Source: Schmidtea nova
Lineage: Eukaryota
Length of the DNA stretch: 64,000 nucleotides
Reading direction: 5' to 3'
NCBI GenBank assembly: GCA_044892505.1
Contig: CM097882.1
Span: forward strand, 254,448,001-254,512,000
Below the pieces are notes generated by a model that saw nothing but the letters and a program-made list of their open reading frames with translations, searched no databases and was not told the origin of the DNA. Within the stretch, counting starts at the first letter, position 1. Every line of letters begins with the position of its first letter. Positions 1 through 63,950 of this stretch are shown here, piece after piece. A program made the position numbers and the translations under genes.

Positions 1-375
1 TCTTTGTATTTTCAATGTCTTTGTTAATATTGCACATGGATTGCAATGTCTTTGTTCATATTGCACAAGAATTGCATATGAATTGCAAAGTCTTTGTTCA
101 CGATGCACATTTATTGCAATGTTTTTGATGACTCATATTTGTGTTAAAAAAATTTGTGTTAAAAAAATTTGAAAAAAAATTTTTGGCGCGAAAAAAAATT
201 TTGAAAAAAAAGTTTTGGCGCGAAAAAAAAATTTATGAGTCATTGATGACTCATCGATGAGTCATCAAAAAAAATTCTACCCCCTGGGGAGGGGTCTTTG
301 TTCTTTTTTCCCGCCCACGCCACACACGCAATGAGTCATACTGTCTTTGTTCCCGGCTCCACACATCTACCTACT
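1..375. mobile_element. Right terminal inverted repeat/subterminal region of a Polinton/Maverick copy extending upstream of the window
   Basis: Ends ...CCCGGCTCCACACATCTACCTACT at 375, the reverse complement of the AGTAGGTAGATGTGTGGAGCCGGG terminus at 53484. Shares the ATGA(G/C)TCAT, TTTCGCGCCAAA and AACAAAGAC repeats. 3' flank is TATTAG. Confidence 0.92.
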
Positions 376-34996: not shown

Positions 34997-35665
34997 AATA
35001 AAAAGTTGTAACTTACATGGACAATATTAAAAAAATTTAATATTTTATATGACAAGTTTTCTTTGTTAGACGGTTATTTTTAGTGTACATAATCATTTTT
35101 TAATTACATTTTAATTATACGGTAAACAACGCAATTTAACCTAAATAACTATATTTAATTAATTATGAATAAATCATAAATGTTTGGATTATAATTATTT
35201 ATAAAGATTTTATATATTTATATTACATCATTTTTCTTAGTTGTATATTTTTAAGTCCCTAATTTATTATATATTTCTTATTTTTGAATATTCCATAATG
35301 CCACATGGAGTGCACAAATAAAAAAGGTTTAGTGGATGCGAGCAGCGAAAAGCAAACAAGAAAAAATGTGAATCACTAAAATCACTACCTGGATTCATGC
35401 TTTAATATGTCAAGAGACCAAGTGATGGCCAAGGTTCATCAAAAGACGTTCTTCCTCAATCTACAATTGATACGGATTCCTCCAATGCTGACAGCATGCA
35501 TTCTTCAAAAGAGCAACTACTGCCAGAAATGGAAGAGAATCACGGAATTTATGCAGAAATACATAATGAAATAGCAGTGGATGAAGTTGAAACAGAAATA
35601 CATGCTGAAAATGATTCTCATCATGATATTGTAAATGTGATGAGTCAAGTGGATGATAAAAATTG

Positions 35666-35752
<87 letters not shown>

Positions 35753-43475: not shown

Positions 43476-46398
43476 CAGTGGCGTACCTAGAACCTTTTCA
43501 GCCCGGACGGTCTTAAATTTGCAGCCCTTTCTAAGTCAATCAAATGGTGGTTTGTATAAATTAATAAACATAAACAAACATTAGGTGGGGAACTTTTTTA
43601 TCATTGAATGCTACATTTAAATTAGGCAATAATAATGGAGACCGCATTAGTTGATATGCTTACAGATGCAACTTTTATAAAAAACAAAATACTTTTTTAA
43701 AGGCCACAAGAAACTTACAGAGGCCACTTATGAAACAAAAAATATACCTAATTTACAAAAAAATTGAATTAATTTTTTAAATTTTATATTTATAAATAAA
43801 TAAATTTCAATTTCTTTTGGATAAACAATCAAATTGTACATATATTTGTATGAAAACATATTTAGAAATTTACTCTTCTAATTTTCATAGTAGAAAAATC
43901 GTGTATAATGCTCTCAAAATTTATATTATTTGTAATTTCTTGTTCTATGGACAATATTGCAAGATTTTGTAGTCTTAAATCACTCATTGTTGAACGAAGA
44001 TACTTTTTAATCAACTTCAATTTTGAGAAGCTCCTTTTGCAACTAGCGACACTGATGGCAATTGTTAAAAAATTCTTAACAAAATTACTATGTTGGGTAC
44101 AGGATTTTCCAATCTATAATATTGAATAAACTTAAGTAGATCAAGAGGGCCTCCATCTTAATTTTCCGAAAATTTTACCTGTTCCTTCAGTTCTGGTACA
44201 GCCATAAAAACATGGATCTTTTTTCTTTCAATATAAAACTGTTCTTTATCAATATCAATAAAATCATTTATTTGGCATTCAAATTCTTCATTTAGTAGGT
44301 TGCATGGTATTATACACGAATATTTTCTTGCAAGAACATGCAACTGATCAAAGCGTTCTTTTATTTATTTTATAATTCTATCCATAGATAAAAACATTTC
44401 TCTTCGTACTTCTTGTTCTAAGGATAGCCCCACGTCTTGCGAATTTTCCCCACTCATATATTTTCCCTTCTAACTCGACGCTCAGTCGATATCTCCAACT
44501 CTTCATAAATCGCTTTGGCTGCTATAATAGCATTTTGTATTAGTGCATCTCTTTGTTCCATGAAACGAATTTGCAAAGAATTTAGTTTTATATGGCATTG
44601 ATGGACATTTAACCCTTTTATTTTCAAGTATTTTGGCGCGTCATTAATTTCCAAAAGAACGGGTTCCCATAAATAGAGATAACATAGAAAACAAAAAGAT
44701 TTCATTGAATTTAGTAATATTCCAGCATTTGATCTCGTCTTACCATTTTCTTCTTCAGATGTTAAATTTTCCAAAGCGCCTAAAATGTAAAAATAATGTT
44801 TTTTTACTATAGTTACTGCTTCTGCTCTAGCACTCCAGCGAGTTTCTACACTGCGTTTAACACCTTGAAGAGTGACAGAAAGTAAAATGACTCATCGATT
44901 TGTGGAAGAAGAAAGAAACGAAAATAACTATTCGAAAGTTCCAAAAAATGTTATGGAATCGATAGCAGTAGAAGCTGCGTGACAACATGCCAAGTTTAAA
45001 GAATGATTTGTATATGCCACAAATTCTGCATTTGGATTTATTTCTCTAATACGAGCTTGAACACCACAGTGTTTTTCTGCCATGACGGCAGCATTATTGT
45101 AAGCCTGTATTCTGTAATCTTTTATATATAAACCGTCATTTTCTAATTTTGTTAAAATCATATTTGTGATTTTCTCAGCAGTTTTCCCTTTAGTTTCTAC
45201 AAAGTCAATAAACAATTCTAAAACTTTAACTTCGCTGCCATCAATAACTACATATCTAATAATTTGACTAGTTTGATCTTTGTGAGAAATATCTGGGGTA
45301 CAGTCAAATATCATACAAAAGTATTTTACTTGCTTTATTTGATCCATAATTGATTTTCTCACCGCGCTTCCCAATAGCTCTATGAATTCGTTCTGAATCT
45401 TTGGCGACAAATAAGAAATACTATATTTATTACCCATCCTAAATTTTACTACATGTTCACGTAATACTGGATCGCACTTAGCCAACAAGTTAACAAGCTC
45501 TAGAAAATCTGCTCTATTTTTCATTGAACTGATATCTTCTTGATGAACACTTTCACGATGACCTCGAAACGCCAAATTTTGTTTTGCTAAGAATTTAATT
45601 ATATCAAGTATTCTTGTAAGAATTTCCTTCCAATTTTTGATTTCCTTATCAATATTCTGTTGTTGTAGATTATCCAAAGTTGCACCATGTCTAAATCTTA
45701 TTTCTAATTCTTTCCAGTAGAAAAATGATTGAATGTGCAGTGGACTCAACTCGTGTTGACTTATTTTGGGATTAAGTTTCCACCATTTGTTAAAATCATT
45801 TTCTAAGTTAAAACTTGATTGACAAAGATCGTCAAATAGTTAACAACAGAAAACAATAAATACTTTCCTTCGATGGTGAATACACCATCTATGACCTTAA
45901 CAACTTTTCACCATTAGGCAAAATTTGAAAAAACCAGTCGCGATTAATTTTTCTTGTTTCACTTTTGACTTTGATAGTATTACCATGACGTTTTACACCT
46001 TCACTGAAATTTGCATCTAAATTTTGAATTGCAAACGGACTTTGACGTACCACGAATACTCTTGTAATGTCGTCAATTTTGTTATGCCATAATCCAACAT
46101 CTTTCATAGAAATAGACGGAATAATTTGTGCAGCAGACTCTTCATCAGAACTTGATGAACTTTTTACTTCTTCTCCAGAATGTAAGGCAGGTCTTTCTGC
46201 TTCAACAACATTGGAAGAAGTTTTCTCTCTTTCGAGGACTGCTACTTCACCAGTACTTGAGGCAACAATATTAAAAGAACTAAAAGTTGATTCACGGCAG
46301 ATGTATTTGAGTAGTGCTCCAGTATTCTTATTCTGTATTTCCTAACTTGCCTTCTTTTTCTTTCTAAATGAAGCTCCGCTTTCTTTTATTCGTTTCAT
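43476..46398 (-). mobile_element. hAT transposon (ZMYM1/TTF-type transposase pseudogene, 43862-46398)
   Basis: End CAGTGGCGTA at 43476. Motifs MKRIKESGASFRKKKK, YCFCC, KQNLAFRGH, FDCTPDISHKDQ, NHSLNL, and C-terminal dimerisation motif SCKRSFSKLKLIKKYLRSTM. Stops and frameshifts; other TIR not found. Confidence 0.93.
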
Positions 46399-46980: not shown

Positions 46981-47472
46981 AATTTCATAAATATTTTCAT
47001 TTAAATAATCAATTTTTTTTGTAATTTGGCTTACTACAGCAATTTACTATAGCAAGCTAAATTCAAATTTATAATTAAAATTAAACTACAATTACAATTA
47101 CGATCAAATTATAATTACCATTACAACTAAAATCACTATTACAATCCTAATCACAACTATAATCATAATCATAATCAAATACACAATTAAAATCACAACC
47201 ACAATTCACACAAATAATTGGGGGGGGGGTTTNNNNNNNNNNNNNNNNNNNNNNNNNNNNNNNNNNNNNNNNNNNNNNNNNNNNNNNNNNNNNNNNNNNN
47301 NNNNNNNNNNNNNNNNNNNNNNNNNNNNNNNNNNNNNNNNNNNNNNNNNNNNNNNNNNNNNNNNNNNNNNNNNNNNNNNNNNNNNNNNNNNNNNNNNNNN
47401 NNNNNNNNNNNNNNNNNNNNNNNNNNNNNNNNNNNNNNNNNNNNNNNNNNNNNNNNNNNNNNNNNNNNNNNN

Positions 47473-47736
47473 TTCCTGTACAGTACACTAAGTAATGCAT
47501 TGAAAAATGGGAAACTATGATGACGTATTTATTTTGGATTTGGTTTTGAAAGTATTTTGAATACGATTACTATTTGGAATATTATCAATAAGTAATTTTT
47601 TAGATGGTGTATAACTGGTTTTTAAAACTGGTTTCTTTGTTTTCTTTGTAAATGGTTTCTTTAAAACTAGTTTCTTTCCCGGTTTCTTCATTTTTCTAGC
47701 CTTTATCAAGCGCGAACGTTTTACTCGAGATTTCAT
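47473..47736 (-). pseudogene. Decayed homologue of the Polinton basic core protein
   Basis: MKSRVK...LIKAR.KK.GKK and FPFFNALL match ORF 59241-59765; truncated by the gap. Confidence 0.85.
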
Positions 47737-47762
47737 TTACATGATTGATAATATACATTTAA

Positions 47763-48386
47763 TTAACTTTGTTTATAAACCATGGTTCTTTCTTTTATTG
47801 AAAATAAATGTTCTAACTCTTAAATCATCACTATATTGTTGTGTGAAATCAAGGAAAAGATATCCACGAAGAGCTTTTGTAGCCTCTTCAAACGCATCAA
47901 TCAAGAAATTCCGATTAGAAGGGTATGCTTGTCTTGCAAGAAAATCAATAACTGTTGCATCTCAAGTATTTTTAAAAACAACAAGATATTAAACATTTAA
48001 ATTTATGGTTCGATGACTGCCACCCTGATGAAATAAATTCTGAGTAATAAAAATAACTGTAACTCCTTTGTGTTTAGCAATGTTTGTAAATAAATTATTA
48101 AAGTTCTTTTCTTTGTTTGCTTCTTGATACAAGACATCAATAATAATCACATCCCCTTCTCTTAATCTAGATGACCAGTTTTTATCGAAACCTTTTTATG
48201 ATTGTCATTTTTATTTTATAAAATTGATCGAGTCATTTCATGTTCATCATCAACACCCTTATGCTAATAAATTTTATTAAACTTTGACTTGAATAATTTT
48301 GATTGTAATAATTTACAAACAAATAATGTTTTTCCACTGCCGCTCGGTCCAACAATTTGAAACACTGCATCATTTCTCAATTACAT
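47763..48386 (-). pseudogene. Polinton packaging ATPase pseudogene
   Basis: Collinear homologue of 58597-59220 (LRNDAVFQIVGPSGSGKT, IIDDLYQEANKEK, HQGG); premature stop at codon 2 and indels. Confidence 0.93.
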
Positions 48387-48477
48387 ATGTCAAATTTTCT
48401 TAATTTATTATTATTGTTTATATTTGTTTTAAATAATAGTTGTTTTTATTATTGTCATATTTAAAAATTTTTCATTA

Positions 48478-48945
48478 ATGATTAGCAACATAAATTATAA
48501 GGGTAAGACTGATATATCCCACTTGAATTTTCCAAATGGGAAATCACAGTAAATGGTGGATAGAAGTGGTAAATATCTGATAATATATTTTAAAACAGGT
48601 AGATTTAGAATTATGGGATACAAGGAATTTATTAGCGGTGAAAAAGTAAAGATTTATGATTTAACAATCCAATCAATTACTGTAATGGTAAACTTAGGAT
48701 TTAGTTGTTATTTAAATGATTTGGCTAAATTAATAGAATGTGTTTACGAGCCAGAAATATTTCCAGCTTTGAGATATATAAAATATAATCCCATGTGTGT
48801 TTGCAAGCGGTAAAGTAGTTATATTAGGTTTAAAAACTAGGTACTATTTAAATATAGTTGATAATATTATTACCGATATAAAATCAATTTTTGAAGATAG
48901 AGTTTTTAGATTTCAACATGTGATATAGATATTAACATGTGACTG
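48478..48945 (+). pseudogene. TBP-like gene of the decayed Polinton copy
   Basis: Collinear homologue of 58036-58503 (YEPEIFPALRY); one nonsense codon and an 8-nt deletion near 48799. Confidence 0.9.
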
Positions 48946-50739
48946 NNNNNNNNNNNNNNNNNNNNNNNNNNNNNNNNNNNNNNNNNNNNNNNNNNNNNNN
49001 NNNNNNNNNNNNNNNNNNNNNNNNNNNNNNNNNNNNNNNNNNNNNNNNNNNNNNNNNNNNNNNNNNNNNNNNNNNCATTACTTTTGAAAAATGGAGCCAA
49101 TCATTTTCAATAATTGATGACCTTATGACTTCGACTGATAAATTCAATATCGCTATTCTTTTAAAATTATTCGAATCTTTCAATAATAAATTAATTATTA
49201 GTTTCATAGACTCATTCGGATATGATAAATCCATGATGAAATTATCCAGTTTTATTATGACTCTTAATGATATTGATCCTACTGAATTGTTGAGCTTGAT
49301 ATTAAAATCACAAAAGTAACAAGAAATAATAGTAAAAGCAAAGAAATATCAAAATAAGTAAAAGTGCAAAAATTAATTAAAATTTATCAAAAATTTAAAA
49401 TTAATATTCATTGGGGGAAATGGGTATGGTTGAAAGCCAAATCAAAACACAGACCCAAAAATAATAATTGAAATTTAGTCAGGGGTCCCCAGAGAAAGTT
49501 ATATAGTAACAACAAAATAATTAAGATTAATTAATCGCCTAATGGGAAGCCCGAGGCAATGGGAAACCCGAGCGATGAAAGAAACCCGGGAGCAGTAGAG
49601 ACCCGTGAGATCAAAGGTGGGAGATTGCACAGGGCAATTAGGGAGGATCCACCCAAGCGCAAACATAATAATTTGTTGATTGATCAATTTAGCCAGAGAT
49701 TGGGTAACTTTTCGGTTTTTGATTAAATTTAATTTCCATTAGCGATATGTGTAAAAGGCAGTGCAAAATAAAGGATGAGCGCTAGTAACTGAGAGATTAA
49801 CTAAAAGAAATTTATTAAAATTTATTAAAATTAACTAAGAGAGAAACAAGAAAGAACTTGCGGAATTCGGAAAAGACAATAAACGAAGTGAGAAAAGATT
49901 TTTGTAACCATTCTAAAGCGAGGATCAAATCTGAACAAGAAAGAAAGTGCAAATTGCTGAAAGTGTAAATTATATTGAAGAAACAAGTTGAGTTAAAAAA
50001 TAATTTGTATTTGTGGTGGTACTCAAATAAATAGTTGTGTTAGGTTTTATTGATTTTCGATTACTAAAGGACACGATAAGTCAGGTCTTTGAACCGATCT
50101 GAAACAAAGTAAAATAGCCCAACAGAATTCAATATGAACCCCATTTTCTGGTCATGTATGAATTTTTCAACTTTTATTTTATTTTTCTACCAAACTTTAA
50201 ACAGATAGTTGATGTATTTTACTTGAAATCATGACACGGACTTTCACTGTGTCTTAAAAACCAAATGACAATTTTCTATAAGTTGATGTTTTTTAAAATA
50301 CATAGAAAAGAGTGTCTATGATTTATTCTAGCCTATATCAAAAAATCTCCAAACAAAATCTCCTAGATAATATTTCATATACACTTTGAAAACATCTCTT
50401 GGGATGATGCTCAAATGATTACATAACAGTAACTGTCTTTTCTAATGATTTACGAAAAAGGGTACTGTTTTTAATACTGCGTATAATACTTTAAAATCCC
50501 AATGTTTTTAAATAAATATACTGACAGATTTTATGATTTACTAGCCTATATTTTGTTTGTACGTGATTATTTTTACTTTGAAATGAAAATTGACAATAGT
50601 ATATAATATAAAAAGTATTTTGAAAATGACCGAATTTCCATATAACTGGTTGATAATGACAGATTTTATCAATAGCTGTCTTTTTTACTACTTCGAAAAT
50701 TCATATTGCCAAATGACTGTATACTAATGTAACCTTAGA

Positions 50740-52589: not shown

Positions 52590-53483
52590 TGTTACGGTAA
52601 ATGTACATTACCAGGTAAATGTATATATTTACCAGTAAATGTATACATTAACTGCAAGATTTGGCAAATGTACATATAACATACATTTACCGATTATTTA
52701 GTAATCATATATACTTTTACCTAGAGGTAATGGTAAAAGTGTAAAGGAATAAAGTTAATTATTCGAGTTTAAATCATTTTTTAAGGTTATGTTTATTATA
52801 CCAAAACCAAAATTTCTTAATAATTGTTTTAAGGTTATGTTTATTATTTTATGTTTATGTTTTTAAGCGTAAATTAAAACTCAACAAATTTTCTAGGTGC
52901 ATTATTAAACAGCAATTATTGTAAATATTACAATTTTAAGTAAGTTTTATTATAGTTCATGATTTACGTAATAATTTTATAAACCTCAATACTAAACCTC
53001 AATATTGCAGAAATGAATCAACGAGAAGAATTTAACAAACAGTTAAATCAGATAATCGCGAGTAAAAATAAAAATAATGTTTATATGAGTAAGAAAATAT
53101 ATGAACAAATCTTAAAGGAAGTGGTAAATGCTAAACAAAAAGAACATTTCAAAACACCACTCGACTATCGGCGTCTACAACGCTATGATATTTTAAATAT
53201 GGGCAAAGAAAAACGTTTAATTTTCCCAGTTGGTAACAGCAATGGAGACACAAGCGTCAAATATTTTGTTACAACAGAAGAACTATTTGATTTAATACAC
53301 AATGCTCATGAAAGTATCGGACATGGTGGGCGCAATAGGCTCATAAAAGAGTTAAGTAATAAATACAAAAATGTCACAACTGAGGCAATAATGTTGTATT
53401 TAAGTTTATGTACAGCTTGCCAACAAAAATCAAAAGGTAAAAAAAAGGGCATAGTAATAAAACCAATAATTTCTAATGAATTG
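52590..53483 (+). mobile_element. Ginger2/TDD-like transposon left part, interrupted by the Polinton
   Basis: TGT start with GGTAAATGTA subterminal repeats. ORF 53013 has HESIGHGGRNR...CTACQ (integrase HHCC, KRBA2/SCAND3-like) and is cut at KPIISNEL, just before the expected catalytic core. Confidence 0.75.
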
Positions 53484-53519
53484 AGTAGGTAGATGTGTGG
53501 AGCCGGGAACAAAGACATT

Positions 53520-53772
53520 ATGACTCATGCGTGGGCGGAAAAAAAGAACAAAGACCCCCCCTCCCCGGGGGGGGGTAGAATTTTTTTTGATGAGTCATCG
53601 ATGAGTCATCGATGAGTCATATTTTTTTTGATGAGTCATAAATTTTTTTTCAAATTTTTTTTTCGCGCCAAAAATTTTTTTTCAAATTTTTTTTTCGCGC
53701 CAAAAATTTTTTTTCGAATTTTTTTTCGCGCCAAAAATTTTTTTTTTTTCAAATTTTTTTTTTCGCGCCAGA
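53520..53772 (+). promoter_or_regulatory. TIR motif array: 5 AP-1 consensus palindromes and 4 E2F consensus sites
   Basis: ATGA(G/C)TCAT at 53520, 53590, 53601, 53612, 53631; TTTCGCGCCA(AA) at 53661, 53693, 53724, 53761. Function is inferred. Confidence 0.65.
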
Positions 53773-55058
53773 AATTTATTTTTTTTAGACAAATTTTTTT
53801 CAACAAATTTTTTAAGACAATTTTTATTTTAAGTCAAATTTTTTTTTCGACAAAATTTTTTTAACACAAATTTTTATTAGACAAAATTTTTTAACACAAA
53901 TTTTTTTAAGACAAATTTTTTTTTAACACAAATTTTTGAAGACAATATTTTTTTTTTAAGTCAAATTTTTTAAAACCAATTTTTTTTTACAAAAATTTTT
54001 TTATTTAGGACAAATTTTTTATAACACAAAATTAGAGTCATCAAAAATATTTGCAACAGGTGTGCAAACTAAACAAAGACATTGTTGTATGTGTGCATGT
54101 TGAATTAATTATTTGTCAAGTATGAAGCTTTTGCACATCAAAACCATCACAGAAGAGGTTCTGCTTCCAGGGTTCTGATCGCAATGTTCTGCTACTAATG
54201 TTTTTATTTATTCATTTAATTATTATTATTATCTTTCAAACTAAAAAAAGACTTTGCAACACGTGTGCAAGTTAACAAAGACATTGCAACACACGTGCAA
54301 GGACTTTGCAACACGCGTGCAACATGAACAAAGACATTGCAACATGCATGCAAACTAAACAAAGACATTGCAATACACATGCAACAATTTGAAATACATG
54401 TGCAACATAAACAAAGACATTAAAAAGCCAAAATTTATTTATAAATATGTCGTTGTGTACGTGTACAAAATTTAGTTTCAAAATTATTTACATCTGAATT
54501 ATTACTCGGAATATTATTCATAGGAATATTATTCATTGTAATATTATTCATCGGAATACTAGTATTTTTCGGAATATTATTCTTTGGAATATTTGACATC
54601 TTCTCCAACCGTATGGATGCCGATAACATCATTATAATTATTAATATAAATAAACTTATATAATGTAATACAATTTATGTTTTTTCGTTTTCAACTGTTT
54701 GATTTTGGTATCTGACTTCATATTCTTTTTTAACAAAGGTTTGATTGATACATTTTAATCGTTCAACTATTTTAATCATTATTTTGTTAATCATTTTTTC
54801 AATATCATTATTAATCACATTATTTTTGGAAGGACATTGATTACATTATAATTTAATTTGACTGCATTCAATGTTTAACTCGCGCAAGTACTATCTTGTT
54901 TTCGAAACGGATGGGATGATTGACAATCTTCCAAAGCTTGTTCTCCTTCAGTATTGTGAATACATAATAATAAAATAAGTATATTTAATTTCATCTTAAA
55001 AACAAAAACTAATATAAAAACTAAATTTGTTCATACTAAAATATTTATTAAAAAACAA

Positions 55059-55475
55059 TTATGCGTATCTTGCATTGTCAACTCTCCAAATCGGAGTAAC
55101 AACATCTTTTTTATCAATCTTGTATCCCTGGATAATAATGGTAACGAACCAGTGTTCTTGATCCACGAAATCAATAGTTTGAAAAGCATCATGAAACCGA
55201 GTTTTTCTGTTATTGATGTACATGGTTTCTTTACATGTCAAATTAACATTGATCTTAGAAAATAATCGATTTAATGCGATAATATCTGCTTTGGCAATAA
55301 TTATAGCAAGACTGTCATATAAAGATTTTGTTAACTTTACCGGAAATGATAATCGATACGGTATTTCATTAACCAAAAAATAAAGTCGACTGTCATAGTA
55401 CATCTGAACTGGTTTGACCTCAGTCTGATAGATTTTTTCGTCGCTTATATCTAAATTTTCTTTTCGTGATTGCAT
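55059..55475 (-). CDS. Polinton hypothetical protein (138 aa), possibly an OB-fold ssDNA-binding protein
   Basis: Intact ATG-initiated ORF inside the element; beta-rich C-terminal pattern. Function speculative. Confidence 0.6.
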   Translation of the reverse strand: MQSRKENLDISDEKIYQTEVKPVQMYYDSRLYFLVNEIPYRLSFPVKLTKSLYDSLAIIIAKADIIALNRLFSKINVNLTCKETMYINNRKTRFHDAFQTIDFVDQEHWFVTIIIQGYKIDKKDVVTPIWRVDNARYA

Positions 55476-55998
55476 GTTGTAAATTGTGACAATATTTTAT
55501 AAAAAGTCTTTGTATTTATACTGATGACTGGATGTCTTTGTCCAATCATATTCATGCATTTGTTTTGCACACACTATGCATATGTATTGCAATGTCTTTA
55601 TTGTATGTGTGCATGTTTAATTATTTAGTATTTGTCAAGTATGAAGCTTTTGCACATCAAAACCATCACAGATTAGGTTCTGCTTCCAGGGTTCTGATAA
55701 TAATGTTGTTATTTATTTAATAATTTATTTATTTATTTATTTCACAATTATTATTATTGTCTTTCATAAAAAACTTTCTTACTAATTATTTAATAAAAAC
55801 TAATTACTTTCTTATATACAATTAATAAAAAAACTACTACTAAAAATTGATTTAATAAAAAAAAAACTATTATTATTTAAATAAAAACTACAAATGAAAA
55901 AAAAAAACTTTTATTAGACTAAACTAAAATCACAAAAAACTAAAACTAAAACTAAAAAATAAGTTATTACATAAAACATATACACATCAAATTGTACA

Positions 55999-56611
55999 TT
56001 ATTGTTCATCGTTTTCTTTTTCTTTTTCTTCTTCTTCCTCCTCTTCTTCAACACCATCAGCCTGTCGATGGCATTCGGCACAATCGGGTGATTGTGGAGA
56101 TTCTGCACAATCAGGTGATTCCGATGGATACGGACCATCTAGAGATGGTGCATGTTCCATTGAGCAATCATTTTTTGATTGATCATCTTCATCAATCGGC
56201 TCCGGAGTAGAGTTGGGCCATGTTTCCTTGATTTGCTCCTCCTCCTCCTCATCGATTTTGTCCATTTGTTGGACATCATAGAGTTTGAGGGAATTCCTCA
56301 AAACCCATATGTTAAACTGCTGGATTCTTTCCACGCACAGAATGTGCTCAGGTACCACTGGCAAATCGGTATTCTGGCTGGTCATGTGGTCCAGCACAAT
56401 CTGATTGATATCTATTCCTGTCAGGACCATAATTTTATATGGGAACATCTCCGGAGCCGTGTAGACCAGAGCCGGCATAAGATTTGGGAATAGTTCCTCC
56501 AGCTTCCGATATATAACATTCATTAATTTTTCTAAATAAAAAAATATTAAATATGAAAAATTAAAAATTAAAACCCTTACGGCTTTTAATTAAAGTTTGG
56601 GTTAGCGACAT
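55999..56611 (-). CDS. Acidic orphan protein, copy 1 (exons 56611-56581, 56531-55999)
   Basis: ATG exon MSLTQTLIKS joins in frame via a 49-nt GTAAG...TTTAG intron (56580-56532) to the 174-aa ORF; Glu/Asp-rich C-terminus. Confidence 0.8.
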
Positions 56612-57244
56612 AATTGTGGATATAAACTATGTGAGATTGTTCATAGTATATATATCAAAGAAACACACATGATTTGAAACATACATAATGAACCAATCAG
56701 AGTGAAGCATGCACAACATGTCTTTATTCTATCGATACACACACACAGAGCCAATCAGAATCGTGCATTTCTAATGTCCAATCATATTCATGCATTTGTT
56801 TTGCACACACTATGCATATGTATTGCAATGTCTTTGTTGTATGTGTGCATGTTTAATTATTTAGTATTTGTCAAGTATGAAGCTTTTGCACATCAAAACC
56901 ATCACAGATTAGGTTCTGCTTCCAGGGTTCTGATAATAATGTTGTTATTTATTTAATAATTTATTTATTTATTTATTTATTTATTTCACAATTATTATTA
57001 TTGTCTTTCATAAAAAACTTTCTTACTAATTATTTAATAAAAACTAATTACTTTCTTATATACAATTAATAAAAAAAACTACTACTAAAACTTGATTTAA
57101 TAAAAAAAAAACTATTATTATTTAAATAAAAACTACAAATGAAAAAAAAAAAACTTTTATTAGACTAAACTAAAATCACAAAAAACTAAAACTAAAACTA
57201 AAAAATAAGTTATTACATAAAACATATACACATCAAATTGTACA

Positions 57245-57860
57245 TTATTGTTCATCGTTTTCTTTTTCTTTTTCTTCTTCTTCCTCCTCTTCTTCAACAC
57301 CATCAGCCTGTCGATGGCATTCGGCACAATCGGGTGATTGTGGAGATTCTGCACAATCAGGTGATTCCGATGGATACGGACCATCTAGAGATGGTGCATG
57401 TTCCATTGAGCAATCATTTTTTGATTGATCATCTTCATCAATCGGCTCCGGAGTAGAGTTGGGCCATGTTTCCTTTTTTTGCTCCTCCTCCTCCTCCTCA
57501 TCGATTTTGTCCATTTGTTGGACATCATAGAGTTTGAGGGAATTCCTCAAAACCCATATGTTAAACTGCCGGATTCTTTCCACGCACAGAATGTGCTCAG
57601 GTACCACTGGCAAATCGGTATTCTGGCTGGTCATGTGGTCCAGCACAATCTGATTGATATCTATTCCTGTCAGGACCATAATTTTATATGGGAACATCTC
57701 CGGAGCCGTGTAGACCAGAGCCGGCATAAGATTTGGGAATAGTTCCTCCAGCTTCCGATATATAACATTCATTAATTTTTCTAAATAAAAAAATATTAAA
57801 TATGAAAAATTAAAAATTAAAACCCTTACGGCTTTTAATTAAAGTTTGGGTTAGCGACAT
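57245..57860 (-). CDS. Acidic orphan protein, copy 2 (exons 57860-57830, 57780-57245)
   Basis: Same structure; intron 57829-57781. Confidence 0.8.
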
Positions 57861-58035
57861 AATTGTGGATATAAACTATGTGAGATTGTTCATAGTATAT
57901 ATATCAAAGAAACACACATGATTTGAAACATACATAATGAACCAATCAGAGTGAAGCATGCACAACATGTCTTTATTCTATCGATACACACACAGAGCCA
58001 ATCAGAATCGTGCATTTAGTGCATCGATATTGCAG

Positions 58036-58503
58036 TCATGAGTCACATGTTAGTATGAAATCAACAAAGGCTTTATCTTCTATAATTGATTTTATATCGT
58101 TAATAATATCATCAACTATAGTACTATAGTCTTTGTTTTTTAATCCTAATATGACTAATTTCCCACTTGCAAATATATTTACACACATGGGATTATATTT
58201 GGTATACCTCAAAGCTGGAAATAATTCTGGCTCGTAAACACACGGTATCAATTTCGATAATTCATTCAAATTACAAATAAATCCTAAATCAGCAGTTACA
58301 GTTATCGATTGTATTGTTAAATCGTAAAACTCAACTTGTTCGTCACTAATAAATTCCCTGCATCCCATTATTCTATATCTTCCTGTTTTAAAGTATATTA
58401 TTGGGTATTTCCCAGTTCGATCTACAATTTGCTGGGGTTTTCCTTTTGGAAATTTCATGTGTGATACATCAGTCTTACCCTTATAATTAATGTTTCTAAT
58501 CAT
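58036..58503 (-). CDS. TATA-binding-protein-like protein (155 aa)
   Basis: IQSITVTADLGFICNLNEL...YEPELFPALRY...VNIFASGKLVILGLK matches TBP repeat 2 (IQNMVGSCDV...YEPELFPGLIY...LIFVSGKVVLTGAK). A degenerate repeat 1 is visible (IRNINYK...IYFKTGRYRIMGCR). Confidence 0.9.
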   Translation of the reverse strand: MIRNINYKGKTDVSHMKFPKGKPQQIVDRTGKYPIIYFKTGRYRIMGCREFISDEQVEFYDLTIQSITVTADLGFICNLNELSKLIPCVYEPELFPALRYTKYNPMCVNIFASGKLVILGLKNKDYSTIVDDIINDIKSIIEDKAFVDFILTCDS

Positions 58504-58596
58504 TACTGAAAATATTTTTAAATGAAATAATTACTTTGAGAACAGGTATTTAAAACAAATATAAACAATAATATTAAGAAAATATAATTTTTAAAT

Positions 58597-59220
58597 ATGG
58601 AATTAAGAAATGATGCAGTGTTTCAAATTGTTGGTCCGAGCGGGAGTGGAAAAACTTTATTTGTTTGTAAATTATTGCAATCGAAATTATTCAAATCAAA
58701 ATTTAATAATATTTATTGGCATAGGGGTGCTGACGACGAAAGCGGAATGACACAAGATCAGTTTTGTAAAATAAAAATGACAATCATTAAAGGTTTCGAT
58801 AAAAACTGGTCATCTAGATTAAAACAAGGTGATGTGATTATCATTGACGACTTGTATCAAGAAGCAAATAAAGAAAAGGATTTCAATAACTTATTTACGA
58901 AAATCAGTAGACATAAAGGTGTTACAGTTATTTTTATAACTCAGAATTTATTTCATCAGGGCGGTAATCATCGAACTCGTAATTTAAATGTTCAATATCT
59001 TGTTGTGTTTAAAAATCCTAGAGATGCAACAGTTATTGATTTTCTGGCAAGACAAGCTTATCCTTCTAATCGTAACTTTTTGATTGAAGCCTTTCAAGAT
59101 GCTACAAAATCTCCTCATGGATATATTTTCCTGGATTTTACTCAACAATGCAGTGATGATTTACGAGTTAGAACTGATATTTTTAACCCGGAAGGAGCCA
59201 TGGTTTATAAACAAAGTTAA
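58597..59220 (+). CDS. A32-like (FtsK-HerA superfamily) packaging ATPase
   Basis: Walker A GPSGSGKT, Walker B IIIDD, and SRH...ITQNLFHQG...RTRNLN motif typical of Polinton ATPases. Confidence 0.96.
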   Translation: MELRNDAVFQIVGPSGSGKTLFVCKLLQSKLFKSKFNNIYWHRGADDESGMTQDQFCKIKMTIIKGFDKNWSSRLKQGDVIIIDDLYQEANKEKDFNNLFTKISRHKGVTVIFITQNLFHQGGNHRTRNLNVQYLVVFKNPRDATVIDFLARQAYPSNRNFLIEAFQDATKSPHGYIFLDFTQQCSDDLRVRTDIFNPEGAMVYKQS

Positions 59221-59240
59221 TTCTGTTTGCAATCGTAATC

Positions 59241-59765
59241 ATGTTAATGAAATCTCGAGTAAAGTTTGAGCCATTGATAAAGGCTAGAACAAAGAAAGCG
59301 GGAAAGAAAACAAAGAAACTATTTACAAAGAAATCTATAAATAAATCAAGAAAGAAATCAACATCCAAGAAAATACTTATGGATAATATTCCCAAAAATA
59401 ATCAAATTAATTTGAAATCTAATGCTAAACAAGCACATCATCGGAGTTTACCGTTTTTTAATGCATTACTTAAAGCCCCCTCCGTTAGAAGAATGGGTAT
59501 TCTTCAATCGTTTCCTAGTTACGTCATCGATGATTTACTCTCTATTTTAATTAAAGTCGTGCGAGGTAAAATGAATCTAACTCCATCTAATCGCCGTGTT
59601 TTGAACAAGCATAAAAAACCATTGTTGTCGCTAGTAAACACAAAAAATAAAAAACTTATGTGCAAAGTAATATATAAACAACAAGGTGGTTTTATCGCAG
59701 CATTGTTACCATTAGCATTATCTTTATTGGGAGGTGCTGGTTTATTGGGAAAAAGAAAGTCATAA
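59241..59765 (+). CDS. Basic core protein with a pX-like C-terminus (probable start ATG 59247)
   Basis: Lys-rich N-terminus; ends QQGG-FIAALLPLALSLLGG, resembling adenovirus pX xxGG|hydrophobic tail. Confidence 0.75.
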   Translation: MLMKSRVKFEPLIKARTKKAGKKTKKLFTKKSINKSRKKSTSKKILMDNIPKNNQINLKSNAKQAHHRSLPFFNALLKAPSVRRMGILQSFPSYVIDDLLSILIKVVRGKMNLTPSNRRVLNKHKKPLLSLVNTKNKKLMCKVIYKQQGGFIAALLPLALSLLGGAGLLGKRKS

Positions 59766-59768
59766 ACA

Positions 59769-59990
59769 ATGGGTCAATCACTACCTAATTTAAATTTAAA
59801 TTTTAAATCTTCTTGTTGTAATGGAGAAGATCTGGACGAACCCAAAAGACGACGCCGGTTTCGGTGGAGTCGAAAAGCTAAGGAAAAAAGCACAGAAGTC
59901 GAAACAACAGACACAAAGTTGGTTATCGGGGCAACTTGCATACAGTCTAAACAAACCGATGTTGAAACGGTTTCCAACTCGAGCATATAA
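59769..59990 (+). CDS. Small ORF overprinting the integrase N-terminus
   Basis: ATG 4 nt after the core-gene stop; MGQ...SSCC...KRRRRFRWSRK; overlaps the integrase ORF in another frame. Confidence 0.4.
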   Translation: MGQSLPNLNLNFKSSCCNGEDLDEPKRRRRFRWSRKAKEKSTEVETTDTKLVIGATCIQSKQTDVETVSNSSI

Positions 59991-60866
59991 AACATATAGA
60001 ATCAATGATTTGTGGCAAATGGATTTGATGGAAATGATTCCGTATTCCAAAATTAACAAGGGGTACAAGTATATTTTAACATGTATCGATGTTTACAGTA
60101 GATTTGCTCGAGCAATTGGAGTCAAATCTAAATCTGCTAATGACATGGCAATCGCTATCAAGACAATGATGAAAAAGGATCGGCCAACTAATTTACAAAC
60201 TGATTTGGGTAAAGTTAAATATAATTTTATATATTTATTATTTTTTTAGGAAAGGAATTTTACAACAGTAAAGTCAAGGAAGTTATCAAGGGAATAAATC
60301 ATTATTCAGTATTCTCACAATTCAAAGCCGCTCATGTCGAGAGATTTAATCGAACTTTGCGTGATCGATTGAAAAAATACTTTGTTTTTAAAGGCAATAA
60401 AACCTGGATTAATGTCTTACCTCAATTGATTCATAGTTATAATCATAGTGCTCATCGGGGTATAAATGGTAGGAAACCGGCAGAAGTAGTTGATACTGAA
60501 AATATTGTGAGTGAAGTGAAAGTAAAGAAACCAAAATATAAAGTTGATGATCATGTTCGAATTAGCAAGATTAGTACATCGCCATTCGTTAAAAATTTTG
60601 ATAATAATTGGAGTGATGAGGTATATCAAATATCGAAAGTCAACACAGTGCAGAATCCTGTCATGTATACTATTCGTGACTCTGATAACAATATAATCAG
60701 CGGCAAATTCTACGAACAAGAATTACAAGTTATTCCTCCACCTACGATATTTAGAATTCAAAATATTTTGAAGACTAAAATGGTAGGTAAGGATAAACAA
60801 TACTATGTCAAATGGCATGGATATAAAGAACCATCATGGATCTCGTCAAAAAATCTAGTAAAGTGA
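59821..60866 (+). CDS. Retroviral-like (rve) integrase with C-terminal chromodomain (exons 59821-60208, 60250-60866)
   Basis: GFGGVEKL, WQMDL (D), QTDLG|KEFYN (D, restored by a 41-nt GT-AG intron), VERFNRTL (E), YYVKWHGY...SWI. Confidence 0.95.
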
Positions 60867-61876
60867 ATTTTTACACTATTTTACCGAGAAATAGTTGTCC
60901 CAATATCCATCCAGATAATACCGCAAGTAAATTCATGGTGAATTTACCTAATCCAATTTATTTAAACGGAAATTGGGAAGTTGCTCTAATGGATTTTACA
61001 TTTGTTTACCAACCTTTTCCATATTATAGTTATTGTAAAATTTATTACTATAAAAAGAAAACAATTGTTGCAAATGCATTTTTCTCGATATATAATAATA
61101 GTGGTCATCTGAATGTTCCAACTCACGCAATTGATCCGGATATCGAAATGTGGCAACGAGGTGGAAGAATAATTCTCACGTGTAATGTTGTTCCGTATAC
61201 AATTACATTTAATGATCTTGATGTGGCAAAACGAATGGGAAGTAATAATCTGACAATAAAATGTACTGAAGAAGAATGTGAATTCAAAGTTATGCAAAAC
61301 TTGGCCAGTAGTGATGAAGAAATAATTACTTTTACTATATCGTATGATCGTCAAGAAGGACATGTATTCACATTCAAGGAGGAGTTGTATATAACGCAAC
61401 TAGATGAATTACAGAAATATATTAGCGATAATTGTTCGGATATTTTTACAGTTGTCGAATTAAATAAATTGTTCAAATTCAAACTCAAAGAAAAAATCAC
61501 TAAAGTCCGATTTGATAAATACTTGGTCAATACATTGGGATTAGATAAGGATACATTTACCGATAAAAATATCATTTCTGGTGTTCGTCAACCGAAAATA
61601 TCTAAACTTCATCAGCAATTATTCGTGTATACTAACATTATCGAACCCATTATTGTTGGTGATTCCTTGGTTCCTTTACTAAAATCGGTATGGATTGAAA
61701 AATACGAGCCAGATGAAATTGTTCAAATACAAGTCGAAAATCCAATGTATTTATCTGTTTCAACATCCTGTATAAACAATATAGAAATAAATATCCGGGA
61801 TGACAGCGGAAGATTTATAAAATTTCCAAAAGATTCAAAAACTCACTTAACTCTACATTTTCGAAAAAACGATTAG
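60836..61876 (+). CDS. Minor capsid protein (penton)
   Basis: FYTILPRNS...PDNTASKFMVNLPNPIYLNGNWEVAL at the N-terminus and LFVYTNIIEPIIVGD...PLL...NNIEINIRDDSG at the C-terminus are Polinton penton motifs. Start may be GTG 60862. Confidence 0.9.
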   Translation: MDLVKKSSKVNFYTILPRNSCPNIHPDNTASKFMVNLPNPIYLNGNWEVALMDFTFVYQPFPYYSYCKIYYYKKKTIVANAFFSIYNNSGHLNVPTHAIDPDIEMWQRGGRIILTCNVVPYTITFNDLDVAKRMGSNNLTIKCTEEECEFKVMQNLASSDEEIITFTISYDRQEGHVFTFKEELYITQLDELQKYISDNCSDIFTVVELNKLFKFKLKEKITKVRFDKYLVNTLGLDKDTFTDKNIISGVRQPKISKLHQQLFVYTNIIEPIIVGDSLVPLLKSVWIEKYEPDEIVQIQVENPMYLSVSTSCINNIEINIRDDSGRFIKFPKDSKTHLTLHFRKND

Positions 61877-61895: not shown

Positions 61896-62255
61896 ATGTA
61901 CAGTAATAGCCAAACTGGTGGTGAATTACCGTATTTTGTCGGTAAACAGTATGGATCAGGTTGGTTGAAAACTATTGGGAGATTTGCACTTCCAATTCTT
62001 AGACGACTAGGTAATTTCGGAATGAATACTGCTAAGGACGTTATCATGAAAGATAATAAAATATTACCGTCATTGAAAACCAATGCTTTGGCAGCAGTTA
62101 ATAAAGCTATACCTGCTGTAACACAAATGCTTCCTACAATTACAAGTATGTTTACAAAAAATAAGGAACCGGAATCTGTACCGGTAGGACCAAGACGTAA
62201 ACGAAAGCGTATAAACAAACGAATGAAAGGTCATGGAACTATATTTGAAGAATGA
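61896..62255 (+). CDS. pVI-like protease-processed virion protein
   Basis: QTGG and QYGSG sites followed by an amphipathic WLKTIGRFALPILRRLG helix; basic C-terminus. Confidence 0.75.
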   Translation: MYSNSQTGGELPYFVGKQYGSGWLKTIGRFALPILRRLGNFGMNTAKDVIMKDNKILPSLKTNALAAVNKAIPAVTQMLPTITSMFTKNKEPESVPVGPRRKRKRINKRMKGHGTIFEE

Positions 62256-63471
62256 TTTGCGGTAAATCTGAATTATTTCTTTTTGATCGACCATCACCTC
62301 AAGCAGTTATTGAATATGGGGCGTTTGAAGATGTGTTTCCAATGAATTCAATTACAGATAGTAGAAATGATGTTGAATTTTACATTAATGGTTCTCAAAC
62401 CGAATATTTGGATTTGAACAATACATTATTGTCCGTTACAATCAAGGTTGTAGATAAAGATAAAAAACAATTAGCTGATGTGAGTGATGTAGTTCCTAAT
62501 AATTATTTGTTTCATACACTTTTCAAAGATGTAATTCTCGGATTTAATAATATAAAAATCGAGGGTGGAAACAATACATATGCGCACAAGGCAATAATCG
62601 AAACTATTTTAAATTATACGAATGATGCGAAAGAAACATGTCTTACTCCAATGGGATATGGTTCCGCTGACGATCGGAAAAAATGGATCAAGGGATCTAA
62701 ACTTTTCAACATGTGTTCATCATTACAACTCGATTTTATGGATCAACCTAAATACTTACTTCCCGGAGTTAATGTACATATTAGATTGAAGCGATCTGAT
62801 TCTGCATTATCATTGAAATCGGCAGCTGGGAAACCAATAATCCAAATAGTTGATGCAAAATTAATGGTAAGAAGAGTTCGATGTGATTCTTCAGTATTGG
62901 CCGGTCATCAAATTGGTTTAAATAAAAAACATGCAATTTATCCATTAAAATCAAAAGAAATTTATCGTTTGCAATCGGTAAAGGGGCATCGTCATTTTAC
63001 AAGGAGCAAATATTTGGAGATAGACGAATGCCTAATTTCATTCTTGTGGCTTTTCAATCCGAAAATCAATATAATGGGTCTTATACCGAGTCAACATCTA
63101 CATTCAAACATTTTAATGTGACTTCATTAACATTGTCGAAAAATACCGATTATCGTGAAACATATACCCAGGATTTTGAAAATGATAATTTTAGTGCATC
63201 ATATATGCAAAGTCTTGTCCGAAATCTAGGTTATTTGGATAAAAACTCGAATTGTGGTATTGGTCTAGATGAATTTAAATCTAGTTATCCATTCTTTACA
63301 TTTGTTCTGGCTCCCGATTTTGATTTGAATCAAAGCCAAATCCCTCAAAACGGAAATTTACGACTCGATATAAAGTTTGCAAAACCTATTGAGGAACCGG
63401 TTCATGTAGTTATATATGGAGTTTTTGAAAATGAAGTTCAAATTACTGCCAATCGAACAATATTAGTTTGA
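62252..63471 (+). CDS. Major capsid protein (double jelly-roll), split by one frameshift near 62963
   Basis: KSELFLF...EFYINGSQTEYLDLNNT, YLLPGVNVHIRLKR, FDL..., GNLRLDIKFAKP. Adding 1 nt at ~62963 joins ORFs 62252 and 63028 (EIxSFAIGKG...MPNFILVAF). Confidence 0.93.
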
Positions 63472-63571: not shown

Positions 63572-63950
63572 ATGGAGTAAGATTTTTAATTGATTAGTTA
63601 TTTATTTTTAATTAGTTCTATTCAGGTATTACATCAAGGTAAAAAAACTATTGGGAAATCAATTTATTGGAGTATTTCCTCTCGATAAAATACCTTATTT
63701 GAAAATGAATCAAGCCATCATTGTAAATACTCAGACATATACGTTGGGTGGTGAACATTGGATTGCAGTTTATGTGAAATCAGATCGAATACATGTATTT
63801 GATGCCTTTGGATATTATTATCCAAATTTACTTGTTCGAAAACTACAAACTATTGGTAAACCTATTGTGTATAATAGAATTCGGTATCAGCATCCTTTAA
63901 CAATCACTTGTGGTGAACATTGCCTTGCATGGTTGAAATCAATGTTATAA
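63572..63950 (+). CDS. Adenain-like cysteine protease (exons 63572-63576, 63626-63950)
   Basis: FIGVFPLD, GEHW (His), FDAFG (Asp), Q, TCGEHC (Cys). ATGGA|GTAAG...TTCAG|G supplies an in-frame ATG via a 49-nt intron. Confidence 0.92.

What the first reader, a model, noticed from the sequence alone, without database searches (positions are those of the whole stretch)
53520..53772. TIRs built from arrays of E2F and AP-1 sites
Seen: five perfect ATGA(G/C)TCAT palindromes, three at an 11-bp period (about one helical turn), and four TTTCGCGCCA(AA) sites. The other copy (1-375) has five AP-1 sites (128, 235, 246, 257, 331) and two E2F sites, so the motifs persist while the poly-T spacers and E2F copy number vary. 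Established: TTTCGCGCCAAA is the DHFR-promoter E2F site, TTTCGCGC is used by the adenovirus E2 promoter, and TGA(G/C)TCA is the Fos/Jun site. Inference: a terminal enhancer/origin sensing S-phase and wound or stress signals, which would suit activation in cycling stem cells during regeneration.
Basis: partly seen in the sequence, partly recalled or inferred. Interest (0 to 1): 0.8.

Follow-up and report, generated by a model that had tools for sequence, protein, structure and literature searches.

The report
Maverick transposon end, AP-1/E2F-like repeats
The flagged stretch is the non-coding end of a virus-like giant transposon (Maverick/Polinton type) in an animal genome; it is built of short tandem repeats carrying perfect look-alikes of binding sites for the cell's AP-1 and E2F regulators, but nothing here shows that the cell's proteins use them.

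Summary
All ten 9-bp palindromes and all six E2F-like words sit at the stated coordinates, far above chance (11 vs 0.62 and 6 vs 0.14 expected in the window). The stretch lies 36-290 bp inside the terminus (53484) of a Maverick/Polinton-like element that runs off the right edge. That element encodes an A32-type ATPase, an rve+chromo integrase, a double-jelly-roll capsid protein, an adenovirus-type protease and a TBP-like protein. Positions 1-375 are the end of a second, separate insertion, not the other arm of the same element, so the window alone cannot prove the sequence is a TIR. The sites ride on tandem arrays (11-bp x3; 32-bp x4.3 vs x2.2), so copy-number change is ordinary array and homopolymer dynamics. 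The two copies are too alike to show selection on the sites (0/32 vs 6/104 substitutions, P=0.15). The words match published AP-1 and DHFR-derived E2F probe sites exactly. Best reading (0.45): a host-factor-bound terminal enhancer and/or auxiliary origin region. Rivals are element-encoded binders and neutral minisatellites. The link to stem cells and regeneration rests on an unidentified host. Fetching further copies was barred and is referred.

The parts
53484..53519 (+). Terminal 36 bp of element B. It starts with AG, has a 4-nt direct repetition from base 2, and contains one AACAAAGAC word (53508-53516).
   Evidence: Similarity to the reverse complement of 1-375 starts exactly at 53484 and ends at 375. 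The 5'-AG(T)...(A)CT-3' ends match those described for Mavericks.
53520..53528 (.). AP-1-like 9-bp palindrome no. 1, 36 bp from the terminus. The same distance holds in copy A (331-339).
53529..53537 (+). GC-rich 9-mer abutting site 1, kept in copy A (312-320, minus strand). It resembles an EGR-type zinc-finger site; that resemblance comes from my memory only.
   Evidence: 3 in the window against 0.01 expected
53554..53576 (.). C-run/G-run inverted repeat (hairpin-capable), present in shorter form in copy A.
53589..53639 (.). Cluster of AP-1-like palindromes: three at an 11-bp period (53590, 53601, 53612) plus one at 53631. Copy A has three (235, 246, 257).
53640..53783 (+). 32-bp tandem array of 4.3 units. 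Each unit holds one E2F-like word (53661, 53693, 53724, 53761) between T runs. GC is 21%.
   Evidence: Copy A has 2.2 units (161-230).
53778..54030 (+). T-rich 15/31-bp tandem array with 14% GC (about 8-16 units). Copy A has only 2.3 units (137-171).
54033..54041 (.). Degenerate copy of the palindrome (2 mismatches). The homologous position in copy A (128-136) is a perfect site.
54050..54421 (+). Inner repeats of 22/31/53/83-bp periods carrying the word AACAAAGACATTGCAA (for example 54274-54289). They are homologous to 1-118 of copy A.
1..375 (-). End of a second insertion (copy A). Its terminus is at 375 and its body lies left of the window. It has five AP-1-like and two E2F-like sites.
55059..55475 (-). 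Element ORF of 138 aa with no family match; the gene nearest the end, transcribed toward the terminus.
55539..58017 (-). Tandem duplication of 1.24 kb (98.4% identical). Each copy has a 174/175-aa ORF with an acidic tail (55999-56523, 57245-57772).
58036..58503 (-). TBP-like protein gene, 155 aa, with one TBP repeat at residues 57-140.
   Evidence: Pfam TBP 1.2e-13; solved TBP structures down to 3.9e-17; 51 relatives
58597..59220 (+). A32-type packaging ATPase, intact.
59821..60866 (+). Integrase (rve core plus chromodomain) in two ORFs in two frames: one discontinuity, either an intron or a frameshift, unresolved and not joined.
60836..61876 (+). 346-aa ORF with no family match. Its position suits a minor capsid protein; this was not tested.
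62252..63471 (+). Double-jelly-roll major capsid protein gene, broken by one frameshift.
   Evidence: 80 relatives of about 406-416 aa. The model of a 78%-identical relative has pLDDT 89.6 and matches iridovirus, PBCV-1, Sputnik and mavirus capsid proteins at E 1e-16 to 1e-12. The window covers relative residues 1-407 in two pieces and two frames.
63651..63950 (+). Adenovirus-type cysteine protease ORF. It is short; its N-terminus is unresolved.
   Evidence: Pfam Peptidase_C5 4.7e-05, 23.6 bits against a cut-off of 21.3
47473..48945 (-). Diverged partial third copy (C), 81% identical to 58056-59472 and inverted. It holds TBP-like and ATPase genes, both broken, and is bounded by N runs, so no end is visible.

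Best explanation
The flagged stretch is the subterminal non-coding region of a Maverick/Polinton-like virus-like element. Reading inward from the terminus it holds a 36-bp unique end, one AP-1-like palindrome abutting a GC-rich 9-mer, a GC hairpin, a cluster of three or four AP-1-like palindromes one helical turn apart, and a 32-bp array with one bidirectional E2F-like word per unit set in T runs. A very AT-rich array follows. The most likely working is a cis-regulatory module read by host factors. bZIP dimers of the AP-1 type and E2F/DP would bind these high-affinity words, and the flanking poly(dA:dT) would keep nucleosomes off. The open, factor-loaded end would then act as a distance-independent enhancer for the element's genes and/or as an auxiliary region helping protein-primed replication start at the nearby terminus, as host factors do in adenovirus terminal repeats. 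Shown: the element type, the position, the array anatomy, the exact word matches, and their presence in two independent insertions. Inferred: binding by host proteins, any effect on transcription or replication, and any coupling to S phase or injury.
For: The terminus and its AG...CT ends come, with the family description. Enrichment is 11 vs 0.62 and 6 vs 0.14 in the window, and 5 vs 0.004 within the end itself. Ten of the 14 core heptamers in 64 kb lie in the two ends. The palindrome occurs at three separate placements with unrelated flanks, at equal or near-equal distances from the terminus in both copies (36/36; 106-128/110-132), so tandem duplication alone does not explain it. The only substitutions inside the four aligned sites fall on the central base that the site definition leaves free (2 of 4 centres, 0 of 32 other site columns). 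In copy A the dinucleotide between two units has changed while the flanking palindromes stay perfect, so the 9-mer is the kept unit, not the junction. The words are identical to published AP-1 and DHFR-derived E2F probe sites. The context is nucleosome-unfavourable, with 14-21% GC arrays beside a 50% GC terminal block.
Against: No binding, accessibility or expression data exist here. Only two copies could be compared, and they differ too little to show constraint: 0/32 against a 5.8% background gives P=0.15. The E2F-like word has a single independent origin per end, and its copy number changes as any minisatellite's would. The nearest genes are transcribed toward the terminus and have their own promoter words (CCAAT-like, TATA-like, the AACAAAGAC family), so the arrays are not promoter-proximal. 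A third, more abundant repeated word (16 vs 0.94) has no exact match to a factor site that I could document, which shows that the ends also carry element-specific repeats. The host and its factor repertoire are unidentified. No motif library was available, so the factor assignments rest on two papers and on general knowledge.
Confidence: 0.45

Rival explanations
1. The repeated words are docking sites for proteins encoded by the element itself (a replication, packaging or integration factor, or an element-encoded DNA-binding regulator). Their likeness to host factor sites would be coincidence, or mimicry by an element-encoded bZIP-like protein.
For: Subterminal arrays of short repeats are the usual form of transposase and packaging-protein sites in DNA transposons and linear DNA viruses (general knowledge). 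The ends also carry a third, element-specific word that recurs at internal intergenic regions. The element encodes at least one DNA-binding protein of its own, the TBP-like one, and several ORFs of unknown function. Part of the element lies outside the window. Periods close to whole helical turns (11, 22, 31-32, 53, 83 bp) would suit cooperative protein arrays.
Against: None of the visible ORFs shows a bZIP, E2F/winged-helix or other matching DNA-binding family at E<=0.01. Two unrelated repeated words each matching a top-affinity host site exactly (9 of 9 and 12 of 12) is unlikely if the sites were arbitrary. A TBP fold reads TATA-like DNA, not these words (general knowledge).
Confidence: 0.2
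2. The arrays are neutral minisatellites that grew by slippage and unequal exchange in a non-coding end, and the likeness to factor sites has no function.
For: Every motif cluster is part of a tandem array recognised by TRF. Array lengths differ freely between the two copies (4.3 vs 2.2; about 8-16 vs 2.3 units). One distal site is perfect in A and degenerate in B. There is no statistical evidence of constraint.
Against: The palindrome also occurs as isolated sites outside the arrays, at the same distance from the terminus in both copies. Chance creation of exact 9-mer and 12-mer matches to two well-known sites in about 300 bp is improbable. The changes seen inside sites fall only on the free central base.
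Confidence: 0.25
3. The first reader's specific version (a subset of the best explanation): the end senses S phase through E2F and wound or stress signals through AP-1, so that the element is switched on in cycling stem cells during regeneration.
For: The word matches are as above. If the host is a planarian, fos-1 and jun-1 are wound-induced there and Mavericks are abundant in planarian genomes. The window's 29% GC is compatible with such a host.
Against: The host is not identified. In the cited planarian study the wound-induced response is unchanged after irradiation and lies mainly in epidermis and muscle, so AP-1 activity is not a stem-cell signal. There are no expression data for the element.
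Confidence: 0.12
4. The palindromes matter as DNA structure rather than as protein sites: hairpins or cruciforms in the displaced single strand or at the end during replication.
For: Folded as single-stranded DNA, 53484-53660 gives -34.2 kcal/mol against -16.1 +/- 2.5 for shuffles, z = -7.2. The GC inverted repeat at 53554-53576 is kept in both copies.
Against: Strong folding follows automatically from any array of palindromic sites, so it does not discriminate. The central-base flips between copies change which units can pair with each other but leave each site intact.
Confidence: 0.05
5. 1-375 and 53484-54400 are the two arms of one 54-kb composite element, as the finding's wording suggests.
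For: The two stretches are inverted copies of each other.
Against: The sharp AG...CT boundaries are on the inner sides (375 and 53484) and similarity continues outward. The Maverick genes lie outside, to the right of 53484. The interval holds a cadherin gene and unrelated repeats.
Confidence: 0.03

Closest known systems
Maverick/Polinton elements and their terminal inverted repeats (as described for vertebrates, PMC8097293)
   Same: The gene set matches: rve integrase, A32-type ATPase, adenovirus-type protease and a double-jelly-roll capsid protein. The ends are 5'-AGT...ACT-3'. The non-coding end of at least 375-900 bp falls within the reported TIR range of 46-1447 bp.
   Different: The polymerase, the second end and the target-site duplication are not visible. 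The element encodes a TBP-like protein and carries a duplicated acidic ORF. No paper in the searched library describes host-factor-like site arrays in Maverick ends.
Adenovirus inverted terminal repeat and adjoining left-end control region (general knowledge, not tested here)
   Same: It is a linear, protein-primed genome whose terminal repeat carries host transcription-factor sites a few tens of bp from the end that aid initiation. Next to it lies a repeat-built enhancer that includes E2F sites.
   Different: The factors and sequences differ. No polymerase or terminal protein is seen in the window. The function here is inferred only. No adenovirus sequence was used or compared.
Polyomavirus/SV40 enhancer-origin regions and the early promoter of autonomous parvoviruses (general knowledge)
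   Same: AP-1 sites beside an origin stimulate both transcription and replication. An E2F site near a genome end ties early expression to S phase.
   Different: Those are small viruses with other replication modes. This is an analogy of logic only.
Subterminal repeat arrays of cut-and-paste DNA transposons (transposase-binding repeats; general knowledge)
   Same: They are short words repeated in both orientations within the first few hundred bp of each end, with variable copy number.
   Different: Those words are element-specific and are read by the element's own transposase. Here two of the three words equal host factor sites, and the enzyme is a retroviral-type integrase, which is known to read only the extreme ends.
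Transposon-borne AP-1 enhancers (for example in LTRs; general knowledge)
   Same: A mobile element carries clustered AP-1 words that can act as enhancers.
   Different: Those are LTR retroelements in vertebrates. Here the carrier is a DNA virus-like element and the sites sit in tandem arrays at its end.

Membership tests
Maverick/Polinton | Retroviral-type (rve) integrase, often with a chromodomain | tested here: met
   rve 2.2e-08 (59821-60249) and Chromo 3.6e-04 (60357-60866). The gene lies in two ORFs with one unresolved discontinuity.
Maverick/Polinton | [quoted passage not shown] | tested here: inconclusive
   None in the 10.5 kb visible. The element runs off the window at 64000.
Maverick/Polinton | Packaging ATPase (A32/FtsK type) and adenovirus-type cysteine protease | tested here: met
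   Pox_A32 3.2e-07; Peptidase_C5 4.7e-05, above its cut-off.
Maverick/Polinton | Double-jelly-roll major capsid protein | tested here: met
   The model of a 78%-identical natural relative (pLDDT 89.6) matches solved double-jelly-roll capsid proteins, including mavirus and Sputnik. The window gene has one frameshift.
Maverick/Polinton | Terminal inverted repeats on one element | tested here: inconclusive
   Only one end of each of two insertions is in the window. Their inverted likeness fits TIRs, but it also fits the same end of oppositely oriented copies.
Maverick/Polinton | 6-bp target-site duplication | not testable with these tools
   It needs both ends of one copy, and fetching more of this element is barred.
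Maverick/Polinton | Conserved end motif 5'-AG(T)...(A)CT-3' with a short terminal repetition | tested here: met
   The ends start with AGT at 53484 and finish with ACT at 375, with a 4-nt repetition from base 2. The exact repeat form differs from the vertebrate (AGT)2.
AP-1 (bZIP) response element | Core heptamer with a free central C/G, here in its extended 9-bp palindromic form | tested here: met
   Ten perfect sites lie in the two ends. The same 9-mer is used as the AP-1 site in a published binding probe.
AP-1 (bZIP) response element | Bound by host Fos/Jun-type dimers | not testable with these tools
   There are no binding or occupancy data, and the host is unidentified.
E2F site | T-run plus CG-rich core, here as a 12-mer readable on both strands | tested here: met
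   Five of the six sites carry the full 12-mer, which is identical to the E2F site of a DHFR-promoter-derived probe.
E2F site | Bound by host E2F/DP; activity tied to the cell cycle | not testable with these tools
   There are no binding or expression data.
Adenovirus-type terminal origin with host-factor auxiliary sites (works-like, not membership) | Host-factor site within a few tens of bp of a protein-primed terminus | tested here: inconclusive
   A factor-like site lies 36 bp from the terminus in both copies. The priming machinery and any binding are unseen.

The most novel reading that the evidence does not exclude
The ends of this Maverick family are signal-integrating control regions. 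Arrays of host AP-1-type, E2F and possibly EGR-type sites next to the replication terminus would couple expression and/or copying of an endogenous virus-like element to host proliferation and injury signalling. The element would also bring its own TBP-like factor for its promoters.
Probability: 0.2. Interest if true: 0.75.

Novelty: new member of a known kind. Interest (0 to 1): 0.4.

Why it matters
How Mavericks/Polintons are transcribed and when they replicate in animal cells is essentially unknown. Their ends have been treated only as integrase and replication termini. If these ends are really read by ubiquitous host factors, that would give a concrete and testable account of when such elements wake up (proliferating or injured cells). 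It would also extend to this ancient lineage the enhancer-beside-origin logic known from adenoviruses and small DNA viruses. If the sites prove neutral or element-specific, the result is still a clean annotation of a young Maverick copy and its end architecture.

Tried and rejected
- **Host identification failed.** The exact look-up of the cadherin ORF found nothing. Its best relatives are unnamed, at 85% and 60% identity. Rfam at gathering thresholds found nothing.
- **Copy C (47473-48945) as a third end.** It is bounded by N runs, which were left unfilled, so no end is visible.
- **Capsid genes by sequence.** Pfam, NCBIfam and the PDB sequence search gave nothing. The question was settled only by fold, using a natural relative.
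- **ORF 55999-56523 as a possible DNA binder.** There was no family hit, and the single-sequence model was unusable (pLDDT 43.9), so no fold search was run.
- **An Rb-binding [LI]xCxE motif in that ORF.** Rejected: the pattern occurs 5 times in 2334 residues of element ORFs, including at the protease's Cys.
- **The junction palindrome between the 11-bp units as the real unit.** Rejected: it is not kept in copy A while the 9-mers are.
- **The bacterial promoter/terminator scan.** It is irrelevant to an animal element and only flagged the palindromes.
- **Helical phasing of the array periods.** Noted, but not statistically persuasive.
- **The one-element (54-kb) reading.** Rejected on the orientation of the termini.

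Full report
**Observation.**
Only one other copy exists in the 64 kb, at 44887. That is 11 observed against 0.62 expected, and no shuffle reaches it.
- The E2F-like 9-mer is present four times at 53661-53769 and twice, on the other strand, at 185-225. That is 6 observed against 0.14 expected.
- Shuffling each end on its own composition leaves the result unchanged: 5 against 0.004 and 0.002, and 4 and 2 against 0.004 and 0.003.
- Outside the two ends the core heptamer occurs 4 times in about 63 kb, at or below expectation.

**What the region is.**
- The sequence from 53484 to the right edge is the left part of a Maverick/Polinton-like virus-like element, here called B.
- Pfam finds an A32-type ATPase (58597-59220), an rve integrase core and a chromodomain (59821-60866), an adenovirus-type protease (63651-63950) and a TBP-like protein (58036-58503) (for TBP).
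- The ORF pair 62252-63471 has about 80 relatives of 406-416 aa without a family name.
- I modelled a natural relative that is 78% identical, using an alignment of 45 relatives. The model has pLDDT 89.6.
- It matches solved double-jelly-roll capsid proteins of an iridovirus, PBCV-1, Sputnik and mavirus at E 1e-16 to 1e-12.
- No polymerase is seen, but the element runs off the window.
- Breaks in B:
  - the capsid gene has one frameshift;
  - the integrase lies in two ORFs in two frames, which is one discontinuity, either an intron or a frameshift.
- The other visible genes are open.
- A diverged partial copy C (47473-48945, 81% identical, inverted) has a broken ATPase gene (at least two frame changes) and a broken TBP-like gene (at least one). 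It is cut off by N runs on both sides.
- The N runs (14881-15045, 17894-18163, 47233-47472, 48946-49075) were left as they are.

**Anatomy of the end, in B coordinates.**
- A 36-bp unique terminus begins with AGT and has a 4-nt repetition from base 2.
- Palindrome 1 lies at 53520, abutted by a GC-rich 9-mer (53529-53537). That 9-mer occurs 3 times in the window against 0.01 expected.
- A C-run/G-run inverted repeat follows at 53554-53576.
- An 11-bp array with three palindromes follows, plus a fourth palindrome at 53631.
- A 32-bp array of 4.3 units comes next, each unit with one E2F-like word between T runs.
- A 15/31-bp T-rich array with 14% GC follows.
- A degenerate palindrome lies at 54033-54041.
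- Innermost are repeats carrying a third word family (AACAAAGAC, 16 in the window against 0.94 expected). That word also occurs in the terminal 36 bp and at internal intergenic regions.
- The terminal 105 bp are 50% GC, against 29% for the window.

**The two copies.**
- Positions 1-375 are the reverse complement of the B end, with the sharp boundary at 375 (...ACT) and at 53484 (AGT...). Similarity continues outward from both boundaries.
- The interval between them holds a cadherin gene and unrelated repeats.
- They are therefore ends of two separate insertions, A (body to the left of the window) and B.
- The window cannot tell whether A shows the opposite end of a like-oriented copy, which would prove a TIR, or the same end of an inverted copy.
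- TIR status is thus inferred from the family norm: TIRs of 46-1447 bp, 6-bp duplications and AGT/ACT end motifs.

**Conservation.**
- Site distances from the terminus agree between copies: 36 and 36 bp; 106/117/128 against 110/121/132 bp.
- B has an extra cluster site. A has a perfect distal site where B is degenerate.
- In the alignable terminal module there are 6 substitutions in 104 non-site columns, 0 in 32 site columns, and 2 in the 4 central columns that the site definition leaves free.
- This is the pattern expected under constraint, but P(0 of 32) is only 0.15.
- Array copy number and T-run length vary, as tandem arrays and homopolymers do without any selection.
- The claim that the motifs persist while the spacers vary is therefore true but not yet evidence of function.

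**Identity of the words.**
- The 12-mer at 53661-53672 is identical to the E2F site of a DHFR-promoter-derived gel-shift probe (PMC3205837).
- The 9-mer is identical to the AP-1 site of a published binding probe (PMC8754650).
- The likeness of the GC-rich 9-mer to an EGR-type site, and of the third word to SOX/TCF or C/EBP-type half-sites, comes from my memory only.
- No motif library was available.

**Position relative to genes.**
- The four genes nearest the end (55059-58503) are all on the minus strand, so they are transcribed toward the terminus.
- Their upstream regions carry other words: CCAAT-like, TATA-like and the third word family.
- The AP-1/E2F-like arrays are 1.5-5 kb from these promoters, so they could act only at a distance or on the terminus itself.

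**Mechanism and rivals.**
- Best reading (0.45): a terminal module bound by host factors, acting as an enhancer and/or as an auxiliary region for protein-primed initiation.
- Rivals:
  - sites for element-encoded proteins (0.2);
  - neutral minisatellites (0.25);
  - DNA-structure roles (0.05). The single strand folds with z = -7.2, but any array of palindromes would do so;
  - a single 54-kb element (0.03).
  - It needs a planarian-like host. Mavericks are abundant in planarians, and fos-1 and jun-1 are wound-induced there.
  - The host was not identified.
  - That wound response is independent of stem cells in the cited study.

**Comparison and novelty.**
- The element is a new member of the Maverick/Polinton kind.
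- The searched library holds no paper linking these elements with E2F, AP-1 or a TBP-like gene.
- The closest working analogies are adenovirus terminal repeats with host-factor sites and the enhancer-origin regions of small DNA viruses. These rest on general knowledge and were not tested.

**Limits and compliance.**
- That step is referred.
- The adenovirus-labelled letters in the finding were not used as a comparator.

1. The script printed per-piece match bounds for copy C, which bracket its frame changes.
2. In my reasoning I read across the gap between the two integrase ORFs using a GT-AG stretch of my own choosing.
3. In one search I used a degenerate E2F pattern recalled from memory. That count should be treated as a lead only.
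4. None went to a tool as a comparator, and the viral one is not written here.

Noticed in passing
58036-58503 (-): The element encodes a 155-aa protein with a single TBP repeat (residues 57-140). It has 51 relatives of about 145-160 aa in unnamed metagenome and read-archive assemblies, at 35-74% identity. No paper in the library links Polintons with a TBP gene.
   Followed up: partly
1-118, 53508-53555, 54072-54421, 55590, 56826, 58129: A third repeated word family (AACAAAGAC, often extended by ATTGCAA) occurs 16 times against 0.94 expected. It lies at the very terminus, in the inner repeats and in internal intergenic regions, and is the most frequent GC-containing word of both ends.
   Followed up: partly
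53529-53537 and 312-320 (-); also 19647-19655: A GC-rich 9-mer abuts the terminus-proximal palindrome in both copies. Copy A has a 10-bp insertion between the two. It resembles an EGR-type site (from memory only).
   Followed up: partly
55539-58017: A 1.24-kb tandem duplication (98.4% identical) doubles a 174/175-aa ORF with a long acidic tail. The ORF has no family match, and the single-sequence model was unusable.
   Followed up: partly
53013-53492 (+): An ORF with a weak integrase zinc-binding (H2C2) match runs straight into the B terminus. B appears to have inserted into another mobile element's integrase-like gene.
   Followed up: no
21640-21850; 54110-54194, 55623-55707, 56859-56943: A small palindromic MITE-like repeat in host DNA shares an ~85-bp segment (78-81% identical) with three intergenic spots inside element B.
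   Followed up: no
47473-48945: A diverged, inverted partial Maverick copy (TBP-like and ATPase genes, both broken) lies between two N runs, 4.5 kb from the B terminus.
   Followed up: partly
27466-30198 (-): A single 910-aa ORF encodes six or more cadherin repeats (a protocadherin-like host gene). Its best relatives are unnamed, at 85% and 60% identity.
   Followed up: partly
44928-45749 (-), 44887: A DUF4371 ORF (hAT/ZBED-type transposase-related) lies next to the only copy of the 9-bp palindrome outside the two element ends.
   Followed up: no
15478-15692; 7665-8568; 5157-5411 vs 35657-35766: Other inverted repeats are present: a near-perfect 107-nt hairpin with a 1-nt loop beside an N run; a 171-nt pair at 95% identity, 562 nt apart; and satellite-like inverted arrays 30 kb apart.
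   Followed up: no
59821-60866 (+): The integrase is split into two ORFs in different frames. Whether this is a short intron (unusual for Mavericks, which are reported as intronless) or a frameshift was left open.
   Followed up: no
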